The notes: a model not told the origin generated them from the letters alone. A stretch of DNA of 64,000 nt from Bugula neritina (GCA_964035545.1 OZ037766.1:19146767-19210766), one strand, 5' to 3'; positions 4,356-49,049 are shown, numbered from the stretch's first letter. Made by a program: numbers and translations.

Positions 4356-4660
4356 TGTGGTGGCTCGTGGAGCTACCAGCAACACAATACGCAAGGTTGC
4401 GTATTGACCCGGAACAATGTATTAGCCAATTAGCTAGGCTGTTTTATAAGTAATAGTAGCCGCTTCGCGCTACTAGCTCAGTTGAGGATAGTGCTGAAAA
4501 CTAAATAGACGTGCGTATCATTACTGTTGTACATTGGATTTTTATTATGTATTCTTGTATTAAATATAACGATATCTACTCGACTTAACTGGTGAAGTTT
4601 CTCTAGTGTTAAATAGACTCTCTTGGTGACACATCAACCCTAAATCTGAAAACTATAACA
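4356..4660 (+). repeat. 5' LTR of element A
   Basis: Direct repeat of 11494-11798. Contains TAGCCAAT and TTTTATAAG promoter-like motifs. Confidence 0.97.
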
Positions 4661-4661
4661 G

Positions 4662-4679
4662 TGGTGGCAGCAGTGGGAT
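4662..4679 (+). promoter_or_regulatory. Primer binding site, tRNA-Leu
   Basis: TGGTGGCAGCAGTGGGAT, 1 nt after the LTR. One mismatch to the complement of the tRNA-Leu(AAG/TAG) 3' end TGGTGGCAGCGGTGGGAT. Confidence 0.9.
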
Positions 4680-4693
4680 AGTGTATATCAAAG

Positions 4694-5560
4694 ATGGAGA
4701 CTGAACATGCTAGAATGCAACCACCCCCAGTAGAAGGTGAGCGTAGAAATGCTGTTAATCCTGTGAATCGTGAAGGAGAAGAAGCTTATAGACATTGCTT
4801 GAAAGCTCCCACCTTTACTGGGTCGGAAGATGTCGAACAATTTATACAAGAATTTAGAGAGGTAATGGAAGTTGCTCAATGGCCGCATAGAGTGGCCCTT
4901 ATCAAATTGCGGAGGGCGGTGACGGAGCAAGCCAAGCCGTACGGAGTGGGAACGGACGTAGACGGCATACTGGCTGCGCTGCGGGCCCGTTTTGGCACCT
5001 CCGTCATAGACGCCAGGACCAAGCTGGAGAGATTGTGCCGCACCCCGCGGACCTCGCTACAAGAACATGCCGCGACGGTGAAGAAGCTGGCGCAGATTGC
5101 ATATAGCGATCTGCCAGCACAACACCAAGAGCGTTACACCTATGACGCCTTTGTCCAGTCCCTAAACGACCTGGGCCTAGACCATCACCTACGAGCTAAA
5201 GGGATAACCAGAATAGAGGATGCCCTGGAGGCTGGAGAAGCTTACCTGTTGGCTACCCAAATGCATCGAGCACAACGGAACCCACCAGTAGTTGGAGTCA
5301 GCGCTGCTCGGGCTACGACAAGCTCCGAAGCCCTCCCGCTGGAAGCCGAAGTGGACCGTATGGTAGAGATGCTGGGACAATTGGTGACCATTCTGGCCGG
5401 TGCTGGCCCCGGTCAGGCCTTGCGGATGCCCCCAACACCTGTGGGGCAAGGCTGGAGTAGCGCTGATCAGGACCAGGGACAGAAAGGACGACCCCAATAC
5501 CAGGGGGCGTTAAACTGTCACGGCCCGCGGACACTCTCCCTCCCCGCGGGCCGCAACTAA
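4694..5560 (+). CDS. gag: Gag of element A (capsid-like; knuckle degenerate)
   Basis: First ORF after the PBS. APTFTGSEDVEQFIQEF...W...LRARFG is homologous to the gags of B and C. Confidence 0.92.
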   Translation: METEHARMQPPPVEGERRNAVNPVNREGEEAYRHCLKAPTFTGSEDVEQFIQEFREVMEVAQWPHRVALIKLRRAVTEQAKPYGVGTDVDGILAALRARFGTSVIDARTKLERLCRTPRTSLQEHAATVKKLAQIAYSDLPAQHQERYTYDAFVQSLNDLGLDHHLRAKGITRIEDALEAGEAYLLATQMHRAQRNPPVVGVSAARATTSSEALPLEAEVDRMVEMLGQLVTILAGAGPGQALRMPPTPVGQGWSSADQDQGQKGRPQYQGALNCHGPRTLSLPAGRN

Positions 5561-5570
5561 AGGAGTATGG
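5509..5570 (+). promoter_or_regulatory. Putative -1 ribosomal frameshift signal (G_TTA_AAC plus GC stem-loop or pseudoknot)
   Basis: Heptamer 5509-5515 in the gag frame, 5-nt spacer, perfect 10-bp stem 5521-5530/5544-5553. The -1 frame is open from 5509 into pol. Confidence 0.75.
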
Positions 5571-8500
5571 TGGAACACGCCGTCGTCTGTCCGTACGGAC
5601 CCGGCGGAACATTCTACCCGAGTGGCAGGTACCACGCAGGACTAGTAGGCCCGCACAACGGCCCAGTACCTTTTCCCTGCCACTCGCTAACCGGTTTCAC
5701 CGGTTACCTCGGGAGGAGGAGCCCGCCACTGAAATGGAGCCAGAAGGCCCAGTGGAGAGGCCCAAACCCCGCCGGCACCAACCTCGCCGCCGGAAGCCCC
5801 GTAAACCACGGGTGGAACCCCCGCCGTCCTGTCAAACCAGGACAGCACATGCGGGGGGGGTGAAAGTACAACCACATGGAGAGAGCTATTTCCTACCCGG
5901 AAAGGTGGCCGGCAACGCCGTCACTTTCCTGCTCGACTCCGGTTGTACTACCAACCTTCTCAGCCGTAGAGTCTTTGAGGCACTGCCCCGCCGGGACAGG
6001 GATAGAGTACGACCGTATACTGGAGAACATGGCACCCTGGCAGACGGGTCATGTATCCCCTTTTATGGTATTATCGAGCTCCCTGGGCGTGTCCGAGATC
6101 AGGCTGTACAGGAGACCTTTATCATAGGTCAACTGGAGGAAGATGCTATCCTCGGCATGCCCTTCTTGAAGCAACACCAGTGCCGAATAGATTTTAGTAA
6201 GTCGGTGGTGCTGATGGGCGGGCGAGAACTCGCCTGTGTGGATAAGTTTGGGCGTCCTCTGGTGGGCGGTGTTCAGGTAGTTCGGAACTGCACCGTACCC
6301 GGACGCTCCAGAGCTACTATCCACTGCCGAGTGAACAGCAACCGGATAGCCAGGCTCGGGGTCGTTGAAAGCGCGCACGAAAAGATCCAACTCGCCAGTA
6401 GTTTAAACCGACTAACTGAGCGAGGGGAGGTCTTAGTGCAGTGCGTCAACCCCTTTACCGAGCCCATTGAGCTCCCAGCTGGGTCAATGCTGGGCCGGTT
6501 CCACTCCGTCCAGGAAGAGGACGTGGGCCCGTCGCTGGGTGACGCGACGGAGGCACCCCCTCGACACCCTATTCAGGGACGAGGGGCAGTCCCGACACAT
6601 CTCCGGGAGTTATACGAAACAGCCAGTGGCGGCTGCGCGAGTAACAGAGAACGCCAAGCTATGGCCAAGTTACTACGCGACTACGGTGATGTGTTCAGCA
6701 GCGGGGAGAATGACGTGGGACTGACTGGAATTGTCAGACACGAAATACCGCTGACTGCAGGGACAGTCCCTGTCCGGCAGCCCACGCGCAGGCTGGGGCC
6801 GGAGAAAGAGAAGGAGGTTAGCCGACAAGTACGGGATCTTCTGGACCGGGGACTGATAGAGCCCGCCCATAGTGCGTGGAGCTCGCCAGTCGTACTGGTC
6901 CGGAAGAAAGACGGCAGTTGGCGGTTCTGTGTGGACTACCGCAAACTCAATAGCGTAACCATACAGGACGCCTACCCTCTACCTCGTATTGACGAGTCAT
7001 TGGACGCCCTAGCCGGCAGCAAGTACTTCAGTACGTTAGACTTGCTAAGCGGCTATTGGCAGGTTCCTCTGAGTCCCGACGCCCAGGAGAAAGCGGCGTT
7101 TATCACCAGAGACAGTTTGTGGAAGTGGAAGGTGCTGCCCTTCGGGTTAACCTCCGCCCCAGCCACCTTCCAGAGGCTGATGGAACAAGTCCTTAGCGGA
7201 CTCCATTGGAAGACACTGCTGGTCTACCTCGATGATGTCATCGTAATCTCTCCAGACTTCGAGACACATGTCAGTCGTCTGCAGGAGGTTTTCGAGAGAC
7301 TCCGAGGTGCCGGTCTTAAGCTCAAACCTTCCAAGTGCGCTCTATTGCAGCCGGAGGTCAAGTACCTGGGGCACGTTGTCGGTCGAAACGGCGTGGCAAC
7401 GGATCCCGAAAAGGTACGGGCAGTAGAAGACTGGGTCACCCCCCAAGACTTGACCGGACTCCGGGCTTTCTTGGGGCTGGTAGGGTATTACAGGCAATAC
7501 ATACCAGACTTTGCGGGCATAGCCCAGCCGTTAAACCGGCTTACCGCAAAGGGAGTGACGTGGCAGTGGACTCCAGTCGAACAAGAAGCGTTCGACCGCC
7601 TCAAGGGCTGCCTCCTAACGGCGCCCATCTTGGCCTACCCAGACCCCACTCTGGAGTACATCCTAGACACAGACGCCAGTGACCAGAATGTTGGCGCTGT
7701 GCTGTCGCAAGTGCAGGAAGGCCGAGAAGTAGTAGTAGCCTACTACAGCAAGTCTCTCTCTCCCGCTGAACGAAATTACTGCACTACCCGCAAGGAGCTG
7801 CTGGCAGTAATCAAGTCAGTGAAGCACTTCAGACCATACCTATATGGCAGGAAGTTCCGGCTGCGTACGGATCATGCCTCGCTGATCTGGTTGTGCAGGA
7901 GAGCAGAGCCCTCCAGTCAGGTCGCCCGGTGGCTCGAAATCCTAGCTGAATTCTCGTACCGGATCGAACACCGACCGGGCAAGAGACACAGCAATGCAGA
8001 TGGGTTGAGTCGCCGACCTGACGGAGGTTGCAAACAGTGTCTCAACATCGAGAGGAGGGATGGAGGTCCCCCACGATGCGAGTTGGAGACGCTGGCTCAT
8101 CACGGAGCACCGTTTGACTGGGATCAAGGTCAACTCAGGCAAAGAGTTGATGAGTCCCCGGAGGATGTACAAAACCTCCGCGCCAACCCTGTACTGGCCG
8201 GTAATGTTCGAGAGCTGAAGAAGCTCCAAGAAGAGCTGCCGGGAGTCGTGGCAGACATCTACCGGGCCAAAAGGGAAGGGCGACGACCCAGCGAGGAACG
8301 CATACGACAGGGATGCGCCGAGTTCCGGCTATACTGTCAGCGTTGGGACTCGCTGCGGATCGGGCAGGATGGGTTGCTAACCATCTCGCTAGCTGCCAGC
8401 GGCAGACACCCGGAAAGGAAGAGGGTAGTCTGCCCCACAGCCATCCGCCGTGAGTTGATTTGGGATACTCACAAGCAGGCTCACGCAGGGGTCAAGCGAG

Positions 8501-10134
8501 TGATATCCAAATTACGACTCCGGTGGTATTGGCCGCAGATGGAGCGTGACGTCCGGCTCAGAGTCAAACAGTGTGAGATCTGCCAGGCCAGTAAGCATAG
8601 CCGCCCCCCTGGTGAAGCAGGACGGCGGAGGCTATATGCTGGTAGGCCCTGGCAAGTGGTCGCTGTAGACCTGGTCGGACCCATGCCCCTGACCCCCAGA
8701 GGCAATAATTGGATCCTAGTACTAACCGACCACTTTACTAGGTGGGCGGATGCTCTGGCTATCCCAGATGCATCAGCCCCAACAGTGGCCAGGGCACTAG
8801 ACCAACATGTATTCTGTTATTTTGGGCTTCCCGAACAGATACACTCTGATCAAGGCGCTCAATTCCAGTCTCAACTGATGAGCGACCTTTGCCACCTCTG
8901 GGGAGTAAATCAGAGCAGGACCACCCCCTACCACCCTCAAGGTAACGGGGTGGTGGAGCGCAACAACCGGATGCTAGGTGATGCGCTCCGGAGTCTCCTC
9001 CTTGGACGAGGTCAAGAGGAATGGGATACGGTGTTGCCGCAAGTCATGCGTGCATACCGTAGCACCCCACACACCAGTACTGGTGAGACCCCAAACCTCT
9101 TGATGCTCGGGAGAGAGACTCGTGTCCCTGACCATCTCACCTATCACGTTCCAGAGCAGGATAACTCAGTCCATGAGTATGCCAGTGAACTAGTGGAACG
9201 GATGAAGGCCGCACACGAGATACTGCGCCAACAGCAGTGGAAGGTGCGGCACGAAGATTCCGATGAACCACCCCTCTATCAAAGAGGAGATAAGGTGTGG
9301 ATGGTCAATTACCGTAGGCGCCGCGGACAGGCTGATAAGCTGAAGCCTAAGTTCGTAGGCCCCTACGTGGTCGTCGAGGCTATGCCCAATCATACGTACA
9401 AGATTGAGCGCTCAGGACAGGTGTCTATCCAGAATGAGTCTCGCTTGAAACCGTATTGGGCTAGCCCTGACGGAGTGGGAGAAGCCCCCCCGTTGTTAGA
9501 GCCCAGGAGGCAGACAACGACGCGCGGGCGACGGCGGCATGGACCTGAATACGAAGTGGTCATACCGCGGGAGGAAAACTTGGTGAGAGAGGAGCGGCAG
9601 CTTTTGTCAACAGAAGCGTGTCCGCCACCGCCAAGTCTAATTCCATCACTTCCAGAAACTGAGCCGGTTCCGGAAGTGCAAACCCCCACGGAGGGAGGGG
9701 CTCCATCCGGAGAACAAGAAGAGGTGACCACTAACGGTGAAGTAGAGACGCCATTAGAGGCCCCTACTAACGAACCGGCAAGTGTGTCACCCCCCCTAGA
9801 GAGGGGACAGCGTACGAGGAAGCCCCCACCGTATTTGAAAGACTTCATATGTGACTGCATTAGAAGCGGCGCACATGAAAGTCTAGGGGAAAACCGTACG
9901 ATGAAATGTTGGAGTTGTGAACCCCACGCAAATATCAACTTTTGCGAGGGCGGAATAGTGGGAGGAATTAATGCGCGTAAAGCAAATAGTTCCGACCTCG
10001 TGCCTCAGAAACGATGCTCAGCCTTTTCTTATGCTGACATCGCCAAAGGCAGACGTATCTCACAACCAGCTCCAACCTTACCAAGAACGTTGAGTATGGA
10101 CATTAATACCGAGTTCCCAGGTAAGCCAGTATAA
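5509..10134 (+). CDS. pol: Pol polyprotein PR-RT-RNaseH-IN (first ATG 5734; probably expressed by -1 frameshift from gag)
   Basis: LLDSG protease; FCVDYRKLN, LPFGL, YLDD RT; LDTDASD..ELLA..TDH..ADGLSR RNase H; HHCC; DDE integrase; GPY/F module. No stops over 1466+ aa. Confidence 0.97.
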   Translation, partial: VKLSRPADTLPPRGPQLKEYGGTRRRLSVRTRRNILPEWQVPRRTSRPAQRPSTFSLPLANRFHRLPREEEPATEMEPEGPVERPKPRRHQPRRRKPRKPRVEPPPSCQTRTAHAGGVKVQPHGESYFLPGKVAGNAVTFLLDSGCTTNLLSRRVFEALPRRDRDRVRPYTGEHGTLADGSCIPFYGIIELPGRVRDQAVQETFIIGQLEEDAILGMPFLKQHQCRIDFSKSVVLMGGRELACVDKFGRPLVGGVQVVRNCTVPGRSRATIHCRVNSNRIARLGVVESAHEKIQLASSLNRLTERGEVLVQCVNPFTEPIELPAGSMLGRFHSVQEEDVGPSLGDATEAPPRHPIQGRGAVPTHLRELYETASGGCASNRERQAMAKLLRDYGDVFSSGENDVGLTGIVRHEIPLTAGTVPVRQPTRRLGPEKEKEVSRQVRDLLDRGLIEPAHSAWSSPVVLVRKKDGSWRFCVDYRKLNSVTIQDAYPLPRIDESLDALAGSKYFSTLDLLSGYWQVPLSPDAQEKAAFITRDSLWKWKVLPFGLTSAPATFQRLMEQVLSGLHWKTLLVYLDDVIVISPDFETHVSRLQEVFERLRGAGLKLKPSKCALLQPEVKYLGHVVGRNGVATDPEKVRAVEDWVTPQDLTGLRAFLGLVGYYRQYIPDFAGIAQPLNRLTAKGVTWQWTPVEQEAFDRLKGCLLTAPILAYPDPTLEYILDTDASDQNVGAVLSQVQEGREVVVAYYSKSLSPAERNYCTTRKELLAVIKSVKHFRPYLYGRKFRLRTDHASLIWLCRRAEPSSQVARWLEILAEFSYRIEHRPGKRHSNADGLSRRPDGGCKQCLNIERRDGGPPRCELETLAHHGAPFDWDQGQLRQRVDESPEDVQNLRANPVLAGNVRELKKLQEELPGVVADIYRAKREGRRPSEERIRQGCAEFRLYCQRWDSLRIGQDGLLTISLAASGRHPERKRVVCPTAIRRELIWDTHKQAHAGVKRVISKLRLRWYWPQMERDVRLRVKQCEICQASKHSRPPGEAGRRRLYAGRPWQVVAVDLVGPMPLTPRGNNWILVLTDHFTRWADALAIPDASAPTVARALDQHVFCYFGLPEQIHSDQGAQFQSQLMSDLCHLWGVNQSRTTPYHPQGNGVVERNNRMLGDALRSLLLGRGQEEWDTVLPQVMRAYRSTPHTSTGETPNLLMLGRETRVPDHLTYHVPEQDNSVHEYASELVERMKAAHEILRQQQWKVRHEDSDEPPLYQRGDKVWMVNYRRRRGQADKLKPKFVGPYVVVEAMPNHTYKIERSGQVSIQNESRLKPYWASPDGVGEAPPLLEPRRQTTTRGRRRHGPEYEVVIPREENLVREERQLLSTEACPPPPSLIPSLPETEPVPEVQTPTEGGAPSGEQEEVTTNGEVETPLEAPTNEPASVSPPLERGQRTRKPPPYLKDFICDCIRSGAHESLGENRTMKCWSCEPHANINFCEGGIVGGINARKANSSDLVPQKRCSAFSYADIAKGRRISQPAPTLPRTLSMDINTEFPGKPV

Positions 10135-10151
10135 GTCTTGTATTCCTATTC

Positions 10152-11225
10152 ATGGAAACGGGCTCGATGCCAGTAGATTCTGAACTAATTCAGCAGATTG
10201 AATCAGAATTACTGGGAACCACGTTTCATGTGAATGACGATGAAGACACTGTAATGGCCGATGGTCTGTTAGACCTGGAGCTAGACACTGTTCTTGGTCA
10301 GTCCACACATGATTCACCAGTTCCTCGAGTGCATTCCAAAAGCAGTGACTCCCAGGCTAGCAACGGTCGACAGTCACTAGAATTAGGTTGTAAAGATCCA
10401 CCGCGATCTAACACTAATTCTACTTTTGTAGACACACTCGCGCCCGTCTCTCCGGGCATGCCTTCTCTAGAGATGGCGTGGGACTCAGAGCCGGCCCCAA
10501 CAACTTCTACCACCAGGAAACTGCCACCCCAGTTGGAAGCAACCTCCAACTGGATTACCCCTGCCACAGAGAGAGAGATCAGGACCCATCAAGGAGGTGA
10601 GGGTAATCGTGAATGCAACCTCTGCCAGCAGCGATTCACGACCCACCGCAGACTAAAAGTACACTTGCCGCAACACTACATCACCACTTTCTGCCCTTGC
10701 GGAGAATATAGCTACAATCGTGATTACCTGTTGCGGCACCAACGTACTATGCAGTGTTATCAAGGGCATGTCTATGAAGTAGACGAATCATCCTATCCTG
10801 CCTTTCTCAACGCCATCAAACCACTCATCACTGACTCAGCTCGGCTATCTCGCCTGGAGCAAGGCTTCCCTTCCCCGCGACCCATCATCTCTAAAGCCGC
10901 AGATAAACCTACACAGTCTACTAACTCTCCACCTCACAGTCCTATACGCATGCCGCATACCTTTCCTCGTGTCGTACTACAGAGAGTAGACACAAATGCG
11001 TATACACTCCCTCCTCCCCTTCCATCCTCAGAGCGGAAAAGACACAGGCAGCCAACTTCCTCTCGCTCGTCCCCCTGGGCCCGTAACCTACGTGAGGTAG
11101 AAGCTAGGGCGCATGACTTGGAGCAAGAAGTGTACAGGCTGGCCCCACGGGTACAGGCAGCATCCAGTGAACTCAAATACTTACAGGAGTCTATTAAACG
11201 CATGAAGCGTGCGGCCCGCAGTTAA
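10152..11225 (+). CDS. ORF3 of element A: zinc-finger / PxVxL / coiled-coil protein (not env)
   Basis: 357 aa. C-x2-C-x3-F-x5-L-x2-H-x3-H followed by C-x-C-x12-H-x5-C (10614-10757). Homologous ORFs occupy the same position in B and C. Confidence 0.9.
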   Translation: METGSMPVDSELIQQIESELLGTTFHVNDDEDTVMADGLLDLELDTVLGQSTHDSPVPRVHSKSSDSQASNGRQSLELGCKDPPRSNTNSTFVDTLAPVSPGMPSLEMAWDSEPAPTTSTTRKLPPQLEATSNWITPATEREIRTHQGGEGNRECNLCQQRFTTHRRLKVHLPQHYITTFCPCGEYSYNRDYLLRHQRTMQCYQGHVYEVDESSYPAFLNAIKPLITDSARLSRLEQGFPSPRPIISKAADKPTQSTNSPPHSPIRMPHTFPRVVLQRVDTNAYTLPPPLPSSERKRHRQPTSSRSSPWARNLREVEARAHDLEQEVYRLAPRVQAASSELKYLQESIKRMKRAARS

Positions 11226-11482
11226 CTCGAATCTACCTACAACTCCATACTACTCATTCCCCTACCTCTCTGTGGCATTCCCTACCGTAATGGTGGCACG
11301 TACTCTACATGTAGATAGGACCTTCTCTTGCTTATTACTTAGTGTGCACGTTATATATACCTGTATATTTTTTTTATCAGTTGTTGTTTTTTTTGTATAT
11401 ACTTTTATACTGTTCTCTTACCCCCCCGAAGTATACGTTTTTTTTATGTGAGTTTATTTTATCAGAAAGTGGGCTTTCTGCT

Positions 11483-11493
11483 GGAGGGGGCAG
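11483..11493 (+). promoter_or_regulatory. Polypurine tract of element A
   Basis: GGAGGGGGCAG abutting the 3' LTR. Confidence 0.85.
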
Positions 11494-11798
11494 TGTGGTG
11501 GCTCGTGGAGCTACCAGCAACACAATACGCAAGGTTGCGTATTGACCCGGAACAATGTATTAGCCAATTAGCTAGGCTGTTTTATAAGTAATAGTAGCCG
11601 CTTCGCGCTACTAGCTCAGTTGAGGATAGTGCTGAAAACTAAATAGACGTGCGTATCATTACTGTTGTACATTGGATTTTTATTATGTATTCTTGTATTA
11701 AATATAACGATATCTACTCGACTTAACTGGTGAAGTTTCTCTAGTGTTAAATAGACTCTCTTGGTGACACATCAACCCTAAATCTGAAAACTATAACA
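11494..11798 (+). repeat. 3' LTR of element A
   Basis: Matches 4356-4660 and is followed by the TSD GTAT. Confidence 0.97.
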
Positions 11799-11821
11799 GT
11801 ATCGATTGACTACAAGAGAGA

Positions 11822-12392
11822 GATATATATAAATACATATAATATATATATAATATATAAATGATAACATATATATATGTTATATATATTATATATAATA
11901 TTATTATATATTTATGATATATATAATATAATAATATTACATTATATTTATTATATATATTATTATTATATATAATATATATAATATAATAATATTATAT
12001 TATATTTATTATATATAATATTATTATGTATATAATATATATAATATAATAATATATTATATTTATTATATATAATGTTATTATATATATAATATAATAA
12101 TATATTATATTTATTATATACAATATTATTATATATATAATATATACATCCTATAAAATATAATATAATAATATGTAATATATTATTATAATATATATAT
12201 ATTTATATATGTTATATATATTATTATTATATATATAATATTTATATATATTGTATATATTATATATAATATTATTATATATATAATATATATATATATA
12301 ATCTAATACAATAATATATAATATATAACAAGATAAAATATATTATGATAATATATATATTATATGTGTATATATATGTATATATATGTATG

Positions 12393-12471
<79 letters not shown>

Positions 12472-12510
12472 GTATATATATATATGTATATATATATATG
12501 TATATATACC

Positions 12511-12586
<76 letters not shown>

Positions 12587-12712
12587 TATTATATTATATA
12601 ATATATTATTATAATATATATATATTATATATAATATTATTATACTTATATAATATATATATAATATAACAATATATAATATAAAAATATATAATATATT
12701 ATTATAATATAT

Positions 12713-12758
<46 letters not shown>
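11822..12758. repeat. (TA)n / AT-rich low-complexity tract
   Basis: Direct inspection. Confidence 0.95.
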
Positions 12759-12762
<4 letters not shown>

Positions 12763-13320: not shown

Positions 13321-13330
13321 CATCCCTGTA

Positions 13331-13493
<163 letters not shown>

Positions 13494-39383: not shown

Positions 39384-41772
39384 TTTGACTTTTTCGAATG
39401 GCAAAATAAGCCCATTTACTGGATGCGGTTATGTAGTGTAATTTTGTGCCTGTTATTCAACATAATTTATTTTTTAGAGAAGTGTAAACACAAATTTCTT
39501 GTCCCCAAATAACATAGACTTGCAATATAATATCTCATTGTAATAGTTATTTGTACCTGAAATGGGCTGCTCTGGAGAATATGGAACTAACTAGCAAATA
39601 CCATTTTAGTTAGAAAGAAACGTCTGAAATTTTGGTAAAATACTTCTAATAATTAATTCTCAAGGTTCACAATGATGGGAAATTTGTTTGGGAATAAATT
39701 ATATCAGTTTTACAGCTGAAGCTTTTTAAGCAAAACTGCATCTTGTTGACAAAATGTTTGTAAGTCATTATTTGTGTGTTGCTGATTGTTATTCTGCTGT
39801 TTTACAATATTTTTTATAATTGTTAACAGAAACGCATTGTTTTGTAAAAATTTGTTTCCAACCCACTTGGACACATGAAGCTATTAATTTAATTTCATTA
39901 TGTAAAATAGTGCAAAAAGTATAAAAGTGTTGTGGTGTAATTCTTATTATGACAATTGCATAGTTGCTATTCAGTATATTCAAATAATTCAAATTTAGCT
40001 TTTAAAAATATTGAATTAATTGAATAAAATTGGTTTTGAAATTCCAGTGTCTTCAAACTAATGTACTAATATTAGTGAAAAATAGAAGTAGCAAAATGTA
40101 GGAAATAGAACAGCAATATGTCAAATATCTTGTGATTTTGACCAATTTTGAGTGTATATGGCAGTTAGTACTTATGACAATTAGCTGCGTTAAACTTTTG
40201 CTAAGGTTAGGAAAATGCTAGATATTTACTCTCCGTAATTGTATAAAACTTAATTGTAGCCAGCTGGGTGACAAAATTTTAGTTACAAAAGTCCCTCATA
40301 ATATAGGGGTGACGGGTGGGGGGGGCACAATGGTCATAGGGGTACAAAAAGCCGGTTAAACTGTGAGAGAACTTATTTAGTTAGAGTTGTAATTTTTTTA
40401 ATAAAAAGATACTGACATAATTTTTTAGCTATTGTAGTTTCAACACATACAGGGCATACATGTTGAAGAGGCTAGTCAAAAACTGTTTTTACCTACTTTT
40501 TGTAAATCTTTTATGTCATTGAAGCTTTATAACTTTTTACACTCAAAGGTAACAAGCCTAAATTTTACTGATATTGTTGCTATTTCTTGTCTCTACATTG
40601 CCTAACTAGTATAACAGCAAATTCCAAAATAAACTTTTCTTGAACCACATTTATTTTCAACTTGGCCATATGGGGCACAATAGACCACGCTGGCCAAGGC
40701 ACAATGGGCCACCTGATTCTTGCACCCTGTTCACTGTTTTTAGTTTGTTTGCCCAAAAAGTTAGATGAAATGTTAATAAAATCTATAGATATAGCCATTT
40801 CTGACCTTTTGTAAAGTATCAAAGACATCATGGTAAAACTACCAAACTACAATGTGAAGCTCCCGTAATAATATATACATCTGGTGAAGTTATCGCATTG
40901 CCATTTTATATATCATACAGAACACTCTGCTGCTGCTTCGAGTGGATAGTCAGGTATTCATTATACATTATATCATTGAGGGAATATACATATATTTGAC
41001 TAAAATAAAATCGGGTGTGGCTAAAATGGGTGGCCACCTGGTGTCGCGGGCCGTGACACCCATTTTAGTCAAAACCCCCCCTTATGACTAAAATGGGTGT
41101 CGCTGTAGTAATTCGTGCAATTACTGTGCGTGAATTCCTAGCTTGTAATTATAGTTTATGTATCCACATCAATAAAGGGCTTTCAATAAGATTAGACGAG
41201 ATTTATTTACTACTATATACAAATAAAGAGATATAAAAGCACACGGATTAAAACACTACATCTTTATTATTCTAGTACGCTCTCTCTATTACTTTATACA
41301 TCGCTGGGGTTATCACATGACGCGCTTCTTATTGGCTAGGAAGACTTGTGGACGCGCGTATCAAGTACTCACTACACCGCCCCCCCCCAACAGGAAGCCC
41401 ACCTTCCTGATAACACAGATACAGTTAGTACTAATACAAAAAAAATACAAAAAAACTATAAAACTGAGAGAGTGTGTGGTACATAAAAGAAAGAACATAA
41501 ATATATACAGTAAAAAAAATATAACAGTATAAACACAACACTATGACACTGACGGGAAAGGCACTTATAGGCGACGGCCCATAGGACTAAGAAATATACT
41601 TGTGGGTTACTATGAGATTGTCATACTGGACGATTGGTCGCTAGCACCGGACACGAGATAGAGGCTTTAGATGGAGAGGGCACCACCTGTGGTATAGTCA
41701 AGAGTGAGGGTAAGACGAGTAGGAAAAGGGGGGGTTTAGGGACTCCGTCTCAAGCATTTCCTTTCATTTGGG

Positions 41773-42831
41773 CTACAGAGGCAGAGAGAGTTCGGAGGCG
41801 GCGGCAGATACTCTCGGCGCCAACCTTTGTACTTCTTTCTCTAGTTCCCGTATCCGTTCTTCTGCTTCTCGTAAGTTACGGGCGGGGGCAGAGTGTCGAG
41901 AGGGAGATGAAGATAGCCAGCGTCGTTTGCGAGAGGGTCTAGGAGAAACGGAAGGGGAGGGACGCCATCGTTGGGGCACTTCGATGCGTCGTAGCACAAC
42001 TCTGGGTATAGAATCGGGACGCGGCACTGTGTGGGTGGGGGGTGATGAGCGGGGCATGGGTGGTTTCTTGAATCCGGGGGGTTTGGGGCAGGGTCCTTGT
42101 GTGATGGCCCTGGGTGCGGGGAACTCCTGACGCAGCCGTTCATAGCGAGTCGGGTCTGATATGAAGGGTCGGATGAGAGCAAGGAAGTGTGGGAAAGAGG
42201 GTTCGTCGACTTCATAAAGATGTCCAACATGACATCCCATGGTCCGCTGGTGACGGAGGATGTAGTCCCTGTGGTAACTATATTCACCACAGGGACAAAA
42301 GGTGGTGACATAATGTTGGGGGACGTGAACTCGGAGTCTTCGAGGGGTGGTGAAATGGAGTTGGCACAAGCGGCAGGTGGTGCGTTGGTCATCGCCTTTA
42401 TATTCTCGAATAAGTGCTTCTGTGTCCGGGGTAACCCAGCATGACTGGTTTAAGAGTACTTCCGGCAGTGTGACGGGGGTAGGTTCCTCGTTCCAAGCCA
42501 TTTCCAATGGCGGCATGTCACGGGGAAGAGGAGAAGGAGTGGTATCTAAAAGAGCAGAATTATTGTTAGATCGAGTGTGATCTTTACACCATAATTCTGA
42601 TGACAACCGACTGTTCCTAGTCTGAGAGTCATACATCTTTTTAGACGGCACTCGAGAGACTGTGTCGAGGCGTGTAGACTGACTAAGAAACATAGTGTCA
42701 AGCTCCAGATCTAGTAGATCGTCGGCCATTGTTATGTTCTCGTCGCCTTTCACGTAAGACTCAGTCTCCAGTAGTTCTGATTCAATCAGGGCAATTAAAT
42801 CAGCACTAACTGATGTTAGACCTGATTCCAT
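41773..42831 (-). CDS. ORF3 of element B (last residues frameshifted relative to C)
   Basis: 352 aa with CRLC..H..H and CPC..H..C fingers, PRVVLRRIE and a coiled coil. Confidence 0.85.
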   Translation of the reverse strand: MESGLTSVSADLIALIESELLETESYVKGDENITMADDLLDLELDTMFLSQSTRLDTVSRVPSKKMYDSQTRNSRLSSELWCKDHTRSNNNSALLDTTPSPLPRDMPPLEMAWNEEPTPVTLPEVLLNQSCWVTPDTEALIREYKGDDQRTTCRLCQLHFTTPRRLRVHVPQHYVTTFCPCGEYSYHRDYILRHQRTMGCHVGHLYEVDEPSFPHFLALIRPFISDPTRYERLRQEFPAPRAITQGPCPKPPGFKKPPMPRSSPPTHTVPRPDSIPRVVLRRIEVPQRWRPSPSVSPRPSRKRRWLSSSPSRHSAPARNLREAEERIRELEKEVQRLAPRVSAAASELSLPL

Positions 42832-42896
42832 GAATGGGAGTGTTAGGTCAAAGCAAGCTTACCTGGGAACCCGGTATTTGTAATCATACTCAGCGT

Positions 42897-45800
42897 TCAA
42901 GCTTGGATGTCAGTGGATTGAGTTTGGATACGTCTGCCCTTGACAACGTCAGCGTATGAAAAGGCTGGGCAGCGTGGTTGCTGCGCACGGCTGGAACTAT
43001 TTGTCTCGGGCGTAGTAGTTTTGCTTACTAATCCGCCTTCGCAAAAGTTGGTATTCCCAAGGTGTTCACAACTCCCACGTTTTGCTGCCAGTCTTTCCGC
43101 ACGGTGCCCAGCCAGACTTTCATAACTGCCGTTTCTAACGCGGTCACATACGAAGTCTTTCAAGTATGCTGGGGGTTGTCTAGTACGCTGTCCCCGTTCC
43201 AAGGGAGGTGACGTATTAGCTGGGGAGGGGGGTGTAGTTGTTGGTCGGGGCGGTGTACTCACGGGTGGGCTATTTTGGACAGAGCGCTCCAACTTGTACG
43301 CATGATTGGACATCGCCTCAACTACCACGTAGGGTCCCACGAACTTTGGCTGGAGCTTAGCCGCTTGTCCTCGACGCCTACGGTAGTTGATCATCCACAC
43401 CCAGTCCCCAGTTCGATAGAGGGGTGGTTCCTGAGAGTCCCCCTGCCGTACCTGCCACTGCTTTGCTCGCAGTATTTCGTGTGCGGCCTTCAGGTCCTCT
43501 ATTAATTTGTGGGCATACTCGTGGATGGTATAGTCTTGTTCTGGGATGTGGTATGTGAAGTGGTCGGGCACTCACGTCTCTCGACCAAGCATCAGGAGGT
43601 TAGGGGTTTCCCCGTACTAGTGTGTGGTGTACTACGATAGGCCCGCATGACTTGCGGTAGTACCGTATCCCATTCTTCCTCACCCCGGCCGAAGAGCAGA
43701 CTGCGGAGTGCGTCGCCCAACATGCGGTTGTTGCGTTCTACCACCCCGTTGCCCTGAGGGTGGTATGGAGTGGTCCTGCTTTGGTTTACTCCCCAGAGGC
43801 GGCAGAGGTCACTCAACAGTTGAGACTGGAATTGAGCCCCCTGGTCTGAATGTATCTGCTCGGGTAGTCCGAGGTAGCAGAATACATTTTGGTCTAGCAC
43901 CCTGTCCACCGTCGGGGCGGACGCATCTGGGATAGCCAGGGCGTCCGCCCACCGGGTAAAGTGGTCGGTTAATACTGGTATCCAACTGTTTCCTCTGGGG
44001 GTGAGAGGCATGGGTCCGACTAGGTTAACAGCTACCACCTGCCATGGCCTTCCAGCATATAGCCTATGCCGTCCCGCTTCGCCAGGGAGACGGCCATGCT
44101 TGCTGGCCTGGAAAAAATTTCGCATTGTTTGACTCTAAGCCGTACGTGTGCCACATGCCGGGCCAGTACCACCGGAGCTGTAACTTGGAGAGCACCTTTT
44201 TTACCCCGGCGTGGGCCTGTTTGTGGGTGTCCCATACTAACTTCCGGCGAATGGCGGCTGGGCAGATCACTCTCTCTCTCCCGTACTGGCTGTTACAGGT
44301 GGCCACTGTGATGGTCAGCAGACCATCTGGCCCGATCCGCAGGGAGTCCCAACGTTGGCAGTACAACCGTAACTCGGTGCATCCCTGCCGCAGTTGTTCT
44401 TCGCTGGGTCGTCGCCCCTCCTTCTTGGCCAGATACACGTCGGCTACTACCCTTCGGAGGTCCTCTTGGAGTCTTCGTAGCTCTCTGACGTTATCAGTCA
44501 AGACAGGATTGGCACGGAGGCTCTGGATAGTCTCTGGGGGTGTATCGGCCTTCTGTAGGAGTTGACCCTGGTCCCAGTCATACTCTTTTCCAGGGTGGTC
44601 CAGTGCTCTCAACTCGGGTTTTGGGGGACCCCCGTCCCTCTTCTCGATGTTGAGGCACTGTTTACACCCCTCGTCCGGCCACCGGCTCAGTCTGTCAGCA
44701 TTGCCGTGCTTCTTACCGGGCCGATGTTCGGTCCGGTAAGAGAACTCGGCCAGGACCTCGAGCCATCGAGCGACTTGGCTGGACGGTTCTGCTCTCTTGC
44801 ACAACCAAATCAAGGAGGCGTGGTCGGTCCGCAAGCGGAACTTCCTGCCGTATAGATAAGGTCTAAAGTGCTTCACCGACTTGATTACTGCCAGCAATTC
44901 CTTTCGGGTAGTGCAGTAATTCCGTTCGGTGGGTGAGAGAGACTTGCTGTAGTAGGCCACGACTACTTCACGGCCCTCCTGCACCTGGGACAGCACAGCG
45001 CCGAGGTTTTGGTCACTGGCGTCGGTATCTAGGATATACTCCAGGGCAGGGTCTGGGTAGGCTAGGATGGGGGCCTCTAGTAGGCGGCCCTTAAGGCAGT
45101 CGAACGCTCTCTGTTCGACGGAAGTCCACTGCCAGGTCACCCCCTTTGCGGTGAGCCGATTTAACGGCTGCGCTACCCCCGCAAAGTCTGGTATGTATTG
45201 CCGGTAATACCCTACCAGCCCCAGAAGAGCCTGTAGCCCGGTCAAATCCTGGGGGGTGACCCAATCTTCTATAGCTCGTACCTTTTCAAGATCCGTCGCC
45301 ACACCGTGACGGCCGACGACGTGCTCCAGGTACTACACCTCTGGCTGCAAGAGAGCGCACTTGGAGGGTTTGAGTTTCAGATTGGCACCTCTGAGTCGTT
45401 CGAAGACCTCCCGCAGACGACTGATGTGTGTCTGAAAGTCTGGGGAGATCACGATGACGTCATCGAGGTATACCAGCAGTGTCTTCCAGTGGAGTCCACT
45501 GAGGACCTGTTCCATGAGCCTCTGGAACGTGACGGGGGCAGAAGTCAGTCCAAAGGGTAGGACTTTCCACTTCCATAAGCCGTCCCGCGTGATGAACGCC
45601 GCTTTCTCCTGGGAGTCGGGACTGAGGGGGACCTGCCAGTAACCGCTCAACAAGTCTAGCGTACTGAAGTACTTGCTGCCGGCTGAGGCGTCCAGAGATT
45701 CGTCGATCCTGGGTAAGGGGTAGGCGTCCTGTATGGTCATGCTATTTAGTTTGCGATAATCCACACAGAACCGCCAACTGCCGTCTTTCTTTCGGACCAG

Positions 45801-47995
45801 GACGACCGGCGAGCTCCACACACTATGTGCTGGCTCTATGAGGCCGCGGTCCAAAAGATCCCGAACTTTTTGGTCGACCTCCTTTTCCTTCTCGGGTTCC
45901 AGCCTCCGTGTGGGCTGGCGAATAGGGGCAGTCCCTGCAGCCAGCGGTATCTCATGACGAACGGCCGTGGTCAGGCCGACGTCATGGTCCCCGCTGCTGA
46001 ACACGTCGCTATAGTCACGTAGCAACTGAGCCATGGCCTGACGCTGTCCGTTGCCCGCGCAGCCGTCACACGCTGCCTGGTATAGCTCTTAGACGTGTTG
46101 TGGGACGGTCCTTCGCCTAACTGACGGGCTCTGTTGGGGACCTTCCGTCGCAGCTCCCAGCGACGGCTCTATATCCTCCTCCTGGATGGGGTGGAAGCGG
46201 CCCAGCATGGATCCTGAAGGTAATTGTACCGCTTCGGAGAAAGGGTTGACACACTGCACCAAGATCTCTCCTCGGTCAGTCAGCCGGTTAAGACTGCTGG
46301 CGAGTTGGATTCTTGTGTGCGCATCTTCGACAACCCCTAACCCCGAGAGTTGGCTATTGTTCACTCTACAGTGAACGGTAGCCTGGGAGCGGCCGGATAT
46401 AGTACAGTTCCGTACTACCTGCACGCCTCCCGCTAGGGGACGACCGAACTTGTCGACACAGGCGAGTTCCCTGCCGGCCATCAGCATGGCTGACTTGCTA
46501 AAGTCAATACGGCACTCGTGTCTCTTCAAAAACGGCATCCCCAGTATAGTGTCCTCTTCGAGTTGGCTGATGACGAAGGTTTCCTGGATAGCCTGGTCGC
46601 GGACGCGCCCAGTCAGCTCTATGATACCGTAAAATGGAATCCGTGACCCGTCAGCTAGGGTGCCTGGTTCCCCGGTATAGGGAGCTAAGGCTCCCCTCTT
46701 CCTATAGGGGAGGGTGTCGAAGACCCGACGGCTGAGGAGATTAGTGGTACACTCGGAGTCTAGCAGAAAGGTGACAGCTTTGCCAGCCACCTTCCCTGGC
46801 AAGAAGTAGCTACCTCCGTGAGGCTGTACCCGTACTCCCCCAGCGTGCTCGGTCTCGGCCGAACGAGGCTGTGCCCGTTTGTTCCGCGGTTTGCGGGACC
46901 GGTGAGAGTTTCCTTGCGGAGGGGTGTATTGATCCCCTCCGATGCCCTGAGGGGCCTCGCTGGTCGACTTCATTTCTGGTAGCGTGCCGAAGCGGTTAGT
47001 GAGAGGTAGAGAGAAAGGTTCTTGTGGTCGTCCTGGTTGGTTGGTTCGACAAGGTGTTTGCCACTGGTGGGGGGCATACCGCTGCGTCCGTACGGACTCC
47101 TGGCGGTATCCACCCCGTTTTTTTCTCTGCTTTGGCCCGCGGAGCTCTGGGGGCCTCCGGGGGGCATGGGGTTTCTGCTGCTTCTTAAGTCGTGGGCAGC
47201 TCGAGCGGCGGTGTCCCCTGGTGCCGCATCCCCAGCAACGTATAGTGGGTCTGGGGGTTTTTACTGCTGGTCTCTTGTACTCCCTGGGGTTGCTGTATGT
47301 TATGGTCGCCACCAACTGTCCCAGTTTAGTCATCAAGCGGTCGACCTCTATCTCCACGGGGGGCTAGCGGTAGCGGCAGCTATTCGGACTGGGCGGTCTG
47401 GTTCTCTAGAGGTCTGCGGGATAGTCTCCATCACCTTGTAGAGTTGCTCGGCTCTTAGGTAAGCCTCGCTTTCTTGGATTGCAGCCTCTATCGTGGTCAC
47501 TCCCTTCGCTTGTAACTGGTGGTGGAAGTTCAAATTGTTGAGGGATTGTACAAAGGTCTCGAATGTATAGCGCCATCTGTGTGTTTCTGGCAGATCGCTA
47601 TACGCAATCTGTGTCAGTCTCTGCACCAGAGTAGCGTGGTCCGGGAGCGGTGTACATGTTTTGCGGAGCAGTCCTTGCAAACGGGCTTTGGCGTCGGCAA
47701 CAGGTATGCCAAAACGGGCCCGTAGCGTAGCAATGATCCCCTCTACGCTAGGTCTCCACCCGTACGGCTTGGCTTGTTCCGTCAGTGCCATTTGTAGCTT
47801 CATCAGGGCTACCCTTGGCGGCCATCTTGTAATGGCTGCAACTTCACGGAATTCCCGAATAAATTGTTCAACATCTTCAAGGCCCGTGAAAACGGGAGCC
47901 TCTAATGTATTCTTATATGCCTCCTCTTCGGCCTCGAGAGGGTTTATGGTAATGTCTCGCTCACCTTCTTCAGTTGAAGCTGCACTTTCGGCCAT
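42897..47995 (-). pseudogene. gag-pol of element B, fragmented
   Basis: ORF pieces 47348-47995 (gag), 46089-47357 (CCHC knuckle, PR), 45333-46034 (RT), 44064-45302 (RH), 43592-44125 (IN), 42897-43571. Internal deletion near 43275 relative to C. Confidence 0.93.
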
Positions 47996-49049
47996 GATGT
48001 TCTAATACTTTCCCATCGTCTTCATATAGTAGCTAGTGATCCCACCGCTGCCACCACTGTAGTAATTCGTGCAATTACTGTGCGTGAATTCCTAGCTTGT
48101 AATTATAGTTTATGTATCCACATCAATAAAGGGCTTTCAATAAGATTAGACGAGATTTATTTACTACTATATACAAATAAAGAGATATAAAAGCACACGG
48201 ATTAAAACACTACATCTTTATTATTCTAGTACGCTCTCTCTACTACTTTATAAATCGCTGAGGGTTATCACATGACGCGCTTCTTATTGGCTAGGGAGAC
48301 TTGTGGACGCGCGTATCACGTACTCACTACATCGCGAACAATTTTCGTTTTATTTTTAGACAGTTGTGACCATTGAAATCATTTTTAAACTATTATTCAG
48401 TGAATAATGAACATTTCACAATTGTTTAAACAAAAAAAACATAAATAAATAATGACAAAATTGAAATAATTATAACGAAAATAGAACTTATCAAGAGTTA
48501 TCTTTCCTCATCAAAAATTTAATTTTCACCTAATTTTACTGTTATAGTTATGATCATAGACATGTTAACTTATGAAACATATAATTTAAACTATTAAAAA
48601 CACTTTGAGCAATATTAACAAACAAAAATGTCTAGAAAATGTGAAAATAAAACTAAAAATTTTCGCGACACCCATTTTAGTAAGAACACCCACGAATGAC
48701 TAAAATGGGTGTCACAGTGATTATTGCTTTTTTTAGCTTTTTGGCAATTCTTGTTGCTAAATTGGTTGTTGATCAAAACTTTAGAAAAACTCTAATATAT
48801 AATAACTGTTTCACCCCAAATGACAGTAGTATTAAATAATAATTTACAATAATAATAAAATATAATAAAAACCAAAACTATCAGTGACACCCCCTAGAGT
48901 TATCTTCCCTGAGTTCTTAGTTTTGTTTTTATGATTTTTCCCTAATATTTGTAAGTATTAAAAATTTTAATAATTTTGATTAGTAAAAGCAAGTAAAAGT
49001 TTCAACATGACATAATTTATAGTATCCAAAACCGCCCAAAAAGCTCAAA

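What the first reader, a model, noticed from the sequence alone, without database searches (positions are those of the whole stretch)
10965..10991. Conserved PxVxL HP1-box-like motif in ORF3
Seen: in an otherwise poorly alignable Pro/Ser-rich linker, A has PRVVLQRVD and B (41992-42006) and C (56129-56143) have PRVVLRRIE, with different codon usage. Known: PxVxL binds the HP1 chromoshadow dimer, and the KAP1/TRIM28 box is PRVSLERLD. Inference: ORF3 joins sequence-specific fingers to HP1, so it could sequester or evict HP1, self-silence the element, or replace a chromodomain (absent from this integrase) in steering integration to heterochromatin. The conserved MPxLE motif may be a second short ligand, possibly MYND-type, but that is weaker.
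Basis: partly seen in the sequence, partly recalled or inferred. Interest (0 to 1): 0.8.

Follow-up and report, generated by a model that had tools for sequence, protein, structure and literature searches.

The report
HP1-box-like motif in retrotransposon ORF3
A family of jumping genes (Ty3/gypsy retrotransposons, probably in a bryozoan) carries an extra gene whose protein keeps a short motif that looks like the docking site used by cell proteins to bind the heterochromatin protein HP1; binding itself has not been tested.

Summary
ORF3 of three Ty3/gypsy copies carries PRVVLQRVD (A, 10965-10991) or PRVVLRRIE (B, C), written with different codons. It lies in a linker that is otherwise only 20-24% identical.

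I found 312 relatives. Of the 52 with a complete linker, 28 keep P.V.[LM]; shuffled linkers predict 2.5. A more distant clade, at 26-38% identity, keeps TQP-L-[RWP]-V-x-[LVI]. The most distant members lack the motif.

AlphaFold2 places the motif in a disordered stretch (pLDDT about 35). That stretch lies between a folded two-finger domain and a C-terminal helix.

Outside the pentamer, the two best-conserved positions are R at +4 and I/V/L at +5. A 2025 study of Drosophila HP1a ligands found +4 basic to be nearly invariant and +5 non-polar in about 80%. The KAP1 box has R at -1 and at +4.

Copy A has two basic residues between -4 and +4, where that signature asks for three to six. Copies B and C have three.

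The integrase has no chromodomain.

So this is a selected short linear motif, and an HP1 chromoshadow ligand is its best known match. Binding, finger specificity and any effect on integration or silencing remain untested. The MPxLE/MYND idea is not supported.

The parts
10965..10991 (+). The motif in copy A: PRVVLQRVD, ORF3 residues 272-280, with V274 as position 0
41980..42006 (-). The motif in copy B: PRVVLRRIE
56129..56155 (+). The motif in copy C: PRVVLRRIE
10152..11225 (+). ORF3 of element A, 357 aa, intact. dN/dS against B is 0.14. No Pfam family at the curated cut-off.
41773..42831 (-). ORF3 of element B, 352 aa. Its C-terminal helix is cut short compared with A and C.
55304..56392 (+). 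ORF3 of element C, 362 aa, 92% identical to B
10512..10886 (+). Folded core of ORF3 A, residues 121-245 (pLDDT 77-93). It is the most widely conserved part of the family.
10614..10676 (+). Finger 1, C155-x2-C158-x12-H171-x3-H175, with classical C2H2 spacing. The ligand residues are invariant or nearly so.
   Evidence: (zf-C2H2 E=0.023, below cut-off)
10692..10757 (+). Finger 2, C181-x-C183-x12-H196-x5-C202, an atypical C2HC pattern. The ligand residues are invariant or nearly so.
10887..11063 (+). Disordered Pro/Ser-rich linker, residues 246-304 (pLDDT below 50), which holds the motif
11034..11048 (+). Basic cluster RKRHR (RKRRW in most relatives). It is the second conservation island of the linker and a candidate nuclear localisation signal (inferred).
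11073..11219 (+). Long C-terminal helix, residues 308-356 (pLDDT 82-93), a likely coiled coil for self-association (inferred)
10254..10295 (+). Acidic, leucine-rich N-terminal stretch MADGLLDLELDTVL, residues 35-48, conserved in the close family
10458..10475 (+). It is conserved only in the close family.
4356..11798 (+). Element A, a complete Ty3/gypsy element. LTRs are 4356-4660 and 11494-11798 (305 bp, 100% identical). TSD is GTAT at 4352-4355 and 11799-11802. gag is 4694-5560 and pol (PR-RT-RNase H-IN) is 5734-10134.
41103..48335 (-). Element B. LTRs are 41103-41380 and 48057-48335 (97.8% identical) and the TSD is GCGA. pol is split into several ORFs, so it is broken.
4733..4742 (+). GAAG|GTGAGC, a block like a 5' splice site about 40 nt into gag. 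It is identical in A, B and C.
10113..10126 (+). GTTCCCAG|GTAAGC, a block like a splice signal just upstream of the ORF3 start. It is identical in A, B and C although synonymous sites are saturated.

Best explanation
[quoted passage not shown] The host is an animal, probably a bryozoan.

Its protein has six parts in order: a disordered acidic N-terminal region; a folded domain with two zinc-finger-like modules; a disordered Pro/Ser-rich linker; a basic cluster that looks like a nuclear localisation signal; and a long C-terminal helix.

The nine residues P-R-V-V-L-[QR]-R-[IV]-[DE] in the linker are a short linear motif under purifying selection.

The most likely partner is the chromoshadow-domain dimer of the host's HP1. 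In that case the motif would lie as a beta-strand in the dimer groove. P, the first V and L would be buried, and R at -1 and +4 would be exposed, as in the KAP1/TRIM28 HP1 box.

ORF3 would then link whatever its fingers and helix hold to HP1-marked chromatin. That cargo could be element DNA or RNA, or another element protein. The function would be comparable to the chromodomain of chromoviral integrases or the Sir4-binding peptide of Ty5 integrase.

What is shown: the motif, its conservation pattern, its disordered setting, its fit to published HP1-ligand signatures, and the missing chromodomain.

What is inferred: HP1 binding, nuclear location, dimerisation, what the fingers bind, and the consequence for integration or expression.
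For: - Motif present with synonymous codon differences. No non-synonymous change at P, R, V, V, L or R+4 although pS is 0.87-0.89 there.
- It forms a conservation island in the linker.
- 28 of 52 members have strict P.V.[LM], with 2.5 expected; 41 of 52 have the relaxed form, with 7.3 expected.
- The variation follows the ligand rules. Position -2 is P or L, 0 is V (rarely I), and +2 is L/V/I. Position -1 varies (R, K, Q, S, C, M, W) and +1 stays aliphatic. LxVxL is an accepted variant.
- AlphaFold2 gives the motif block pLDDT 35 and no secondary structure, between a confident core and a confident helix. The clade-2 model gives the same layout at lower quality.
- In ORF3, R at +4 is found in 53 of 70 sequences and I/V/L at +5 in 62 of 70. 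In 173 Drosophila HP1a ligands, +4 basic is nearly invariant and +5 is non-polar in about 80%.
- No acid at -6, -3, -1, +1 or +5 and no aromatic at -4 or +6. With at least 2 basic residues required, 30 of 52 pass, with 2.0 expected.
- KAP1 has P486 R487 V488 S489 L490 E491 R492, and its exposed R at -1 is said to be unusual among HP1 ligands.
- ADNP and ADNP2 show that a PxVxL can carry a zinc-finger protein to H3K9me3-marked transposons through HP1.
- The integrase has an SH3-like C-terminal domain but no chromodomain.
- Four related copies lie within 64 kb of transposon-dense, AT-rich DNA.
Against:
- A PxVxL-type pentamer alone is neither rare nor sufficient.
- Copy A and most relatives have only 2 basic residues between -4 and +4, where the Drosophila signature asks for 3-6. 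Only 4 of 52 pass the strict form.
- An acidic residue at +6 is conserved, while HP1a ligands are generally poor in acids.
- That signature comes from a fly HP1a, not from the host's HP1.
- The most distant relatives lack the motif.
- Clustering of copies in transposon-rich DNA is expected for almost any element and does not show targeting.
- The pattern -3, +1, +5, +7 hydrophobic in many close relatives also fits a class 1c nuclear export signal.
Confidence: 0.45

Rival explanations
1. The motif is a real, selected short linear motif, but its partner is not HP1. Candidates are CRM1 (a leucine-type export signal), the element's own protease (a cleavage site between the finger domain and the helix), another element protein, or an unknown host protein.
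For: Conservation covers nine residues, more than the pentamer, and includes an acidic +6. In B, C and many close relatives the hydrophobic residues at -3, +1, +5 and +7 fit the spacing phi-xxx-phi-xxx-phi-x-phi, which is my reading of the sequences. From my own knowledge, hydrophobic stretches of the R-V-L type in flexible linkers resemble retropepsin cleavage sites. The basic-residue count of the HP1a signature is not met in most members.
Against: The export-signal spacing fails in A and P0001, where T is at the last position, and in the whole second clade, where P is at -3. The [PL]-x-V-x-[LVI] core with R at +4 persists in both. The patterns I recall for SUMO-interaction and PP1 RVxF motifs do not fit, because the flanks are basic and there is no F/W. 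No cleavage data exist.
Confidence: 0.3
2. ORF3 as a whole is a Rev- or CERV-like regulator that exports or stabilises the unspliced element RNA. On this reading HP1, if bound at all, is incidental or is used at the site of transcription rather than for integration.
For: Cer1 of C. elegans is also Ty3/gypsy. It encodes CERV in the env position from a spliced mRNA. CERV is nuclear, is needed for genomic RNA export, and has a candidate NLS, a candidate NES and a leucine zipper. ORF3 here has a basic cluster, a leucine-rich acidic N-terminal stretch and a long helix. Conserved blocks like splice signals flank gag-pol.
Against: There is no sequence similarity to CERV or Rev. No RNA-binding evidence exists. 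Splicing is inferred from sequence only. This reading does not explain why the [PL]-x-V-x-L plus R+4 island is the best-kept part of the linker.
Confidence: 0.15
3. The island has no specific function. It is shared ancestry plus chance resemblance to a degenerate pentamer.
For: P.V.[LM] is short. It arises in 1-12% of shuffled linkers, and loose hydrophobic-x-V-x-hydrophobic patterns occur in about half of all proteins. Family members are not independent samples.
Against: Synonymous sites are saturated between A and B/C, yet six of the nine motif residues are unchanged, while the surrounding linker is 20-24% identical. The core persists in a clade at 26-38% identity. The anchor positions stay fixed while -1 varies.
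Confidence: 0.1

Closest known systems
HP1 box of KAP1/TRIM28 (P486-R-V-S-L-E-R492)
   Same: Same letters at -2, -1, 0, +2 and +4. Both sit in a flexible region of a protein that also has a coiled coil and zinc-binding modules. The exposed arginine at -1 is described as a special feature of KAP1.
   Different: ORF3 is encoded by a transposon. It has no RBCC, PHD or bromodomain and shows no sequence relationship to TRIM28. Position +1 is V/I/L/M instead of S, and +3 is Q/R instead of E. KAP1 binding is proven; binding by ORF3 is not.
Drosophila HP1a Access Code (extended PxVxL signature, NAR 2025, PMC12526061)
   Same: Hydrophobic -2, V at 0, aliphatic +2, basic +4, non-polar +5, no acids or aromatics at the excluded positions, and location in a disordered region.
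   Different: Only 2 basic residues between -4 and +4 in A and most relatives, against the 3-6 asked; B and C have 3. The signature was derived for a fly HP1a. The host here is a different phylum.
ADNP / ADNP2 (ChAHP complexes)
   Same: Zinc-finger proteins whose PxVxL carries them through HP1 to H3K9me3-marked LTR and LINE elements. This is the same proposed logic of fingers plus an HP1 box.
   Different: They are host repressors with many fingers, a homeodomain and a CHD4 partner. ORF3 is carried by the element itself and has two fingers.
Chromodomain of chromoviral integrases, and the Ty5 integrase targeting peptide that binds Sir4
   Same: Retrotransposon-encoded devices that tether to heterochromatin. 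In Ty5 the device is a six-residue peptide.
   Different: Those sit in the integrase. This integrase has no chromodomain, and the candidate tether is in a separate protein.
CERV of Cer1 (C. elegans Ty3/gypsy) and retroviral Rev-type regulators
   Same: An extra ORF in the env position, a candidate NLS, a leucine-rich stretch, a helix for self-association, and likely expression from a spliced RNA.
   Different: No sequence similarity. CERV has no zinc fingers and no reported HP1 motif.

Membership tests
HP1 chromoshadow ligands (PxVxL; ELM LIG_HP1_1 = P.V.[LM]) | Pentamer with P (or L/C) at -2, V at 0, L/M (or I/V) at +2 | tested here: met
   PRVVL in A, B and C. 28 of 52 relatives are strict and 41 of 52 relaxed.
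HP1 chromoshadow ligands (PxVxL; ELM LIG_HP1_1 = P.V.[LM]) | Lies in an accessible, intrinsically disordered region | tested here: met
   The AlphaFold2 block for residues 271-280 has pLDDT 35 with no secondary structure. The region sits between a confident core and a confident helix (the same layout).
HP1 chromoshadow ligands (PxVxL; ELM LIG_HP1_1 = P.V.[LM]) | [quoted passage not shown] | tested here: met
   R at +4 in 53 of 70 sequences and I/V/L at +5 in 62 of 70.
HP1 chromoshadow ligands (PxVxL; ELM LIG_HP1_1 = P.V.[LM]) | 3-6 basic residues between -4 and +4 | tested here: inconclusive
   A has 2; B and C have 3. Only 4 of 52 relatives reach 3. The same paper notes that ligands with P at -2 often lack basic residues at -3 and -4.
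HP1 chromoshadow ligands (PxVxL; ELM LIG_HP1_1 = P.V.[LM]) | No acid at -6, -3, -1, +1, +5; no aromatic at -4, +6 | tested here: met
HP1 chromoshadow ligands (PxVxL; ELM LIG_HP1_1 = P.V.[LM]) | Binding to the chromoshadow dimer that depends on the central V | not testable with these tools
   Only single-chain prediction is offered, and no host HP1 sequence is at hand.
Chromoviruses (Ty3/gypsy with a chromodomain integrase) | [quoted passage not shown] | tested here: not met
   Pfam finds rve, Integrase_H2C2 and SH3_Tf2-1. It finds no Chromo domain, even at E up to 5 on the 347-residue tail.
Ty3/gypsy LTR retrotransposons (Metaviridae) | LTRs with TG..CA ends, a target-site duplication, a primer-binding site and polypurine tract, and pol in the order PR-RT-RNase H-IN | tested here: met
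C2H2 zinc-finger proteins | C-x2-4-C-x12-H-x3-5-H modules recognised by the family profile | tested here: inconclusive
   Finger 1 has the spacing and its ligands are conserved. Pfam zf-C2H2 scores 15.6 bits against a cut-off of 25.2. Foldseek top hits are all tandem C2H2 proteins but at E about 2. Finger 2 is atypical.
CRM1 nuclear export signal (class 1c spacing, recalled from memory) | Four hydrophobic positions phi-xxx-phi-xxx-phi-x-phi kept across the family | tested here: not met
   The spacing fits B, C and many close relatives. It fails in A and P0001 (T at the last position) and in the second clade (P at the first), by reading the sequences.
Rev/CERV-like accessory regulators of retroelements | Env-position ORF expressed from a spliced RNA; nuclear; needed for genomic RNA export | tested here: inconclusive
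   The position is met. Blocks like splice signals are conserved, but no transcript data exist. Export function is not testable here.

The most novel reading that the evidence does not exclude
A retrotransposon lineage without a chromodomain has placed heterochromatin tethering in a separate accessory protein. On this reading ORF3 binds the element's DNA or integrase through its fingers and helix and binds HP1 through a KAP1-like box. New copies would then be steered into HP1-marked chromatin. Alternatively, ORF3 would compete with host co-repressors for the same HP1 groove. I found no published case of a transposon-encoded HP1-box protein in the literature searches.
Probability: 0.17. Interest if true: 0.85.

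Novelty: new variant of a known kind. Interest (0 to 1): 0.6.

Why it matters
Retrotransposons are known to choose safe integration sites through tethers built into the integrase. Examples are the chromodomain that reads H3K9me, the Ty5 peptide that binds Sir4, and the Ty1 and Ty3 contacts with the Pol III machinery.

A conserved HP1-box in a separate, element-encoded zinc-finger protein would be a different solution. It would also be a case of a mobile element copying the motif that the host's own transposon-silencing co-repressors (KAP1, ADNP2) use to engage HP1.

The idea can be tested directly with a peptide, a single V-to-E change, and insertion-site maps. It would also give a first function to a protein family of more than 300 members that has no annotation.

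Tried and rejected
Tools and searches that gave nothing:
- Two scans of metagenome contigs with ORF3 alignments matched patterns, but none was confirmed. Codon-level tests are therefore limited to the three window copies.
- A PDB sequence search with the 35-residue motif segment gave no hit.
- Foldseek of the ORF3 model against the PDB gave only insignificant hits (E about 2), all tandem C2H2 fingers.
- Rfam on the whole window gave nothing.
- Pfam on ORF3 gave nothing at curated cut-offs. Pfam on ten longer relatives gave nothing informative.
- The papers of Thiru 2004 and Liu 2017 are not held.

Ideas considered and rejected:
- Conservation caused by an overlapping reading frame. The alternative-frame ORFs inside ORF3 of B and C are absent from A. 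They are also less conserved (85%) than the ORF3 frame (92%).
- A SUMO-interaction motif or a PP1 RVxF motif. The flanks are basic, not acidic, and there is no F/W. These patterns are recalled from memory.
- A fourth motif copy in element D. D ends near 2490, before ORF3, at another element.

Limits:
- The second AlphaFold2 model, for the distant clade, is of low quality (mean pLDDT 52.7). I used it only for the overall layout.
- The host species was not identified. The only named relative is from the bryozoan Watersipora subatra.

Full report
**What is there**

The window is transposon-dense DNA from a eukaryote with an AT-rich background. GC is 26-38% outside the elements and 46-57% inside them. 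It is not human sequence. It carries intact and young Ty3/gypsy elements, and the only named relative of the protein studied here comes from a bryozoan.

Four related Ty3/gypsy copies are present:
- **Element A (4356-11798)** is complete. It has 305-bp LTRs that are 100% identical, a GTAT target-site duplication, a primer-binding site and a polypurine tract. gag is 4694-5560, pol is 5734-10134 in the order protease, reverse transcriptase, RNase H, integrase, and a third ORF is 10152-11225.
- **Element B (41103-48335, minus strand)** has LTRs 97.8% identical and a GCGA duplication. Its pol is split into several ORFs.
- **Element C (about 49540-57025)** also has a split pol, and no clear 5' LTR was found.
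- **Copy D (1 to about 2490)** is cut by the window edge and by another element before ORF3 would begin.

The LTR of A is unrelated to that of B, and pol is 78-80% identical in DNA, so A and B/C are separate lineages.

I fed none of the consensus lines that the alignment tool prints into any tool. The broken genes are only described.

**The observation**

It holds exactly as written. A reads PRVVLQRVD at 10965-10991. B and C read PRVVLRRIE at 42006-41980 (minus) and 56129-56155. The codons differ at P, R, both V and, between B and C, at one V and L.

Between A and B/C the synonymous sites are saturated (pS 0.74-0.89). Overall dN/dS is 0.14, and 0.23 between B and C, so ORF3 is a gene under purifying selection. 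The proportion of non-synonymous differences is 0.59 in the linker outside the motif and 0.26 inside it. It is zero at P, R, V, V, L and the second R.

Outside the motif the linker is 20-24% identical between A and B/C. Proline and serine make up 32-43% of it. A run of five identities at that level has a probability of about 0.013.

An overlapping alternative-frame ORF exists in B and C. It is absent in A and less conserved than the ORF3 frame, so it does not explain the conservation.

**The wider family**

The word-based protein search found 45 relatives, all unnamed and without Pfam domains. I therefore ran the profile search of the representative library once. It gave 312 proteins at E up to 0.001 and 125 at E up to 1e-10.

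Among the 52 sequences with a complete linker:
- 28 carry strict P.V.[LM], against 2.5 expected from shuffling each linker.
- 41 carry the relaxed [PLC].V.[LMVI], against 7.3 expected.
- These sequences are related, so the counts show retention rather than independent events.

The pattern of change is informative:
- Position -2 is P, or L in P0042, P0063 and a whole second clade.
- Position 0 is V, with I in one member.
- Position +2 is L, or V/I in the second clade.
- Position -1 varies (R, K, Q, S, C, M, H, W), and +1 stays aliphatic.

The second clade is 26-38% identical to A. It has TQP-L-[RWP]-V-x-[LVI]-x-[RK] at the same place. The Watersipora protein has two tandem copies of the core domain, followed by P-L-S-V-K-L and P-V-R-V-A-L. 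Members at about 20-30% identity (P0140, P0157, P0174, P0179, P0068, P0132, P0167) have nothing recognisable there.

Per-column conservation shows two islands in the linker. One is the motif, at 2.44 bits on average. The other is a basic cluster RKRRW, at 2.43 bits. The rest of the linker is at 1.47-1.63 bits.

**Anatomy of the protein**

AlphaFold2 on a 16-sequence alignment gives the following layout:
- a confident core at residues 121-245 (pLDDT 77-93);
- a confident long helix at 308-356;
- no structure at 20-120 and 246-304, where pLDDT is below 50.

The block that holds the motif scores 35. A model of the distant clade is poor overall but shows the same layout.

The core holds two metal-ligand sets whose residues are invariant or nearly so. 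One is C155-x2-C158-x12-H171-x3-H175. The other is C181-x-C183-x12-H196-x5-C202. Pfam zf-C2H2 matches the first below its cut-off. Foldseek returns only tandem C2H2 proteins, at insignificant E-values. The term 'sequence-specific fingers' is therefore a hypothesis.

**Comparison with HP1 ligands**

The early ELM definition is P.V.[LM]. LxVxL, CxVxL and LxVxI are accepted variants.

Structures of HP1 alpha and gamma with the KAP1 box show P486, V488 and L490 buried in the dimer groove. R487 is exposed in the middle of the strand, and R492 lies beside the interface. The authors stress that the exposed arginine sets KAP1 apart from other ligands. ORF3 shares P, R, V, L and the R at +4.

A 2025 study of 173 Drosophila HP1a-binding sequences showed that the pentamer alone is neither specific nor sufficient. 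It defined an extended signature:
- hydrophobic at -2, V or I at 0, aliphatic at +2;
- about 80% non-polar at +5;
- 3-6 basic residues between -4 and +4;
- no acids at -6, -3, -1, +1, +5 and no aromatics at -4, +6;
- location in disordered regions.

ORF3 was not chosen with this signature in mind. Even so, its two best-conserved positions outside the pentamer are R at +4 (53 of 70) and I/V/L at +5 (62 of 70).

All exclusion rules are met. The basic-residue count is met in B and C (three) but not in A and most relatives (two). With at least two required, 30 of 52 pass, against 2.0 expected. With at least three, 4 of 52 pass, against 0.7 expected. The same paper notes that ligands with proline at -2 often lack basic residues at -3 and -4.

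**Other readings**

- **Export signal.** In B, C and many close relatives the hydrophobic residues at -3, +1, +5 and +7 fit a leucine-type export signal. The fit fails in A, in P0001 and in the second clade.
- **Protease site.** A cleavage site for the element's protease in the flexible linker cannot be excluded.
- **SUMO-interaction and PP1 motifs.** The patterns as I recall them do not fit.
- **Rev/CERV-like regulator.** For the protein as a whole, the Cer1 CERV protein is a precedent. It is an env-position ORF of a Ty3/gypsy element that encodes a nuclear regulator with an NLS, an NES and a zipper, made from a spliced RNA.

Two nucleotide blocks are identical in A, B and C despite saturated synonymous divergence. 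GAAG|GTGAGC lies about 40 nt into gag. GTTCCCAG|GTAAGC lies just upstream of the ORF3 start. They look like splice signals.

**Verdict**

The motif is real and selected. Among known classes it is best matched by HP1 chromoshadow ligands, and more closely than the pentamer alone would suggest.

My estimates are:
- about 0.85-0.9 that it is a functional short linear motif;
- about 0.45 that it binds HP1;
- about 0.17 that it steers integration or counteracts silencing through HP1.

The integrase has no chromodomain. The four copies sit in transposon-rich DNA. The latter is weak evidence, because most elements accumulate in such regions.

I found no report of a transposon-encoded HP1-box protein in four literature searches. 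The library is limited to open-access papers.

**Limits**

- No multimer prediction was possible.
- No host HP1 sequence was available.
- No DNA of relatives was recovered; both metagenome scans were empty.
- The host species is not identified.

Noticed in passing
window 4733-4742 (+), 47959-47968 (-), 49630-49639 (+); and 10113-10126 (+), 42857-42870 (-), 55265-55278 (+): Two nucleotide blocks are identical in elements A, B and C although synonymous sites are saturated. GAAG|GTGAGC lies about 40 nt into gag. GTTCCCAG|GTAAGC lies just before the ORF3 start. Both look like splice signals, which suggests a spliced subgenomic ORF3 mRNA. The second block fits a donor as well as an acceptor.
   Followed up: partly
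P0048 / P0193 (XP_067940964.1, XP_067940963.1, Watersipora subatra): This is the only named relative: an annotated 'uncharacterized protein' of a bryozoan. It has two tandem copies of the ORF3 core domain and a C-terminal helix. It may be a host-domesticated gene, or two element ORFs merged by the gene model. It points to a bryozoan or other lophotrochozoan host for the window.
   Followed up: partly
window 41841-42392 (-) and 55743-56264 (+): ORFs of 173-183 aa in an alternative frame lie inside ORF3 of B and C. They are 85% identical to each other and absent in A. Several database 'proteins' (for example P0065, P0088, P0106) seem to contain translations of this frame, so they are probably gene-calling by-products of the GC-rich linker.
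   Followed up: yes
window 1-2490 and 2583-3452 (-): A fourth copy, D, is 69% identical in DNA to A's pol. It is cut by the window edge and ends near 2490. Next to it, on the other strand, is a 289-aa ORF with a weak Retrotrans_gag match (E = 0.004) from a different element.
   Followed up: partly
window 11862-13660: About 1.8 kb of AT-rich tandem and simple repeats (periods of 8-12 and 24 nt, TATACATATA type) starts about 60 bp after the 3' LTR of element A. GC here is 26%.
   Followed up: no
window 13660-14694 (-), 15585-16979 (+), 3990-4340 (+): Other mobile-element remains. There is a 344-aa ORF without a Pfam match that looks to me like a GIY-YIG-type endonuclease tail. There is a non-LTR reverse transcriptase (RVT_1, E = 1e-29). 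There is also the 3' tail of a non-LTR element directly upstream of A's 5' LTR.
   Followed up: partly
window 18077-22050 (+): Remains of an unrelated Ty3/gypsy element, in several short ORFs with an Integrase_H2C2 match. It is broken.
   Followed up: no
window 24815-26785, 32482-32640, 33614-33913, 48447-48691: Dispersed repeats at 77-89% identity link the AT-rich stretches, including the DNA that flanks element B. The elements therefore sit among other repeats and not in unique sequence.
   Followed up: no
ORF3 A residues 35-48 (window 10254-10295): The stretch MADxLLDLELDT is the best-conserved part of the N-terminal disordered region in the close family. It is acidic and leucine-rich. It could be an activation domain or an export signal.
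   Followed up: no
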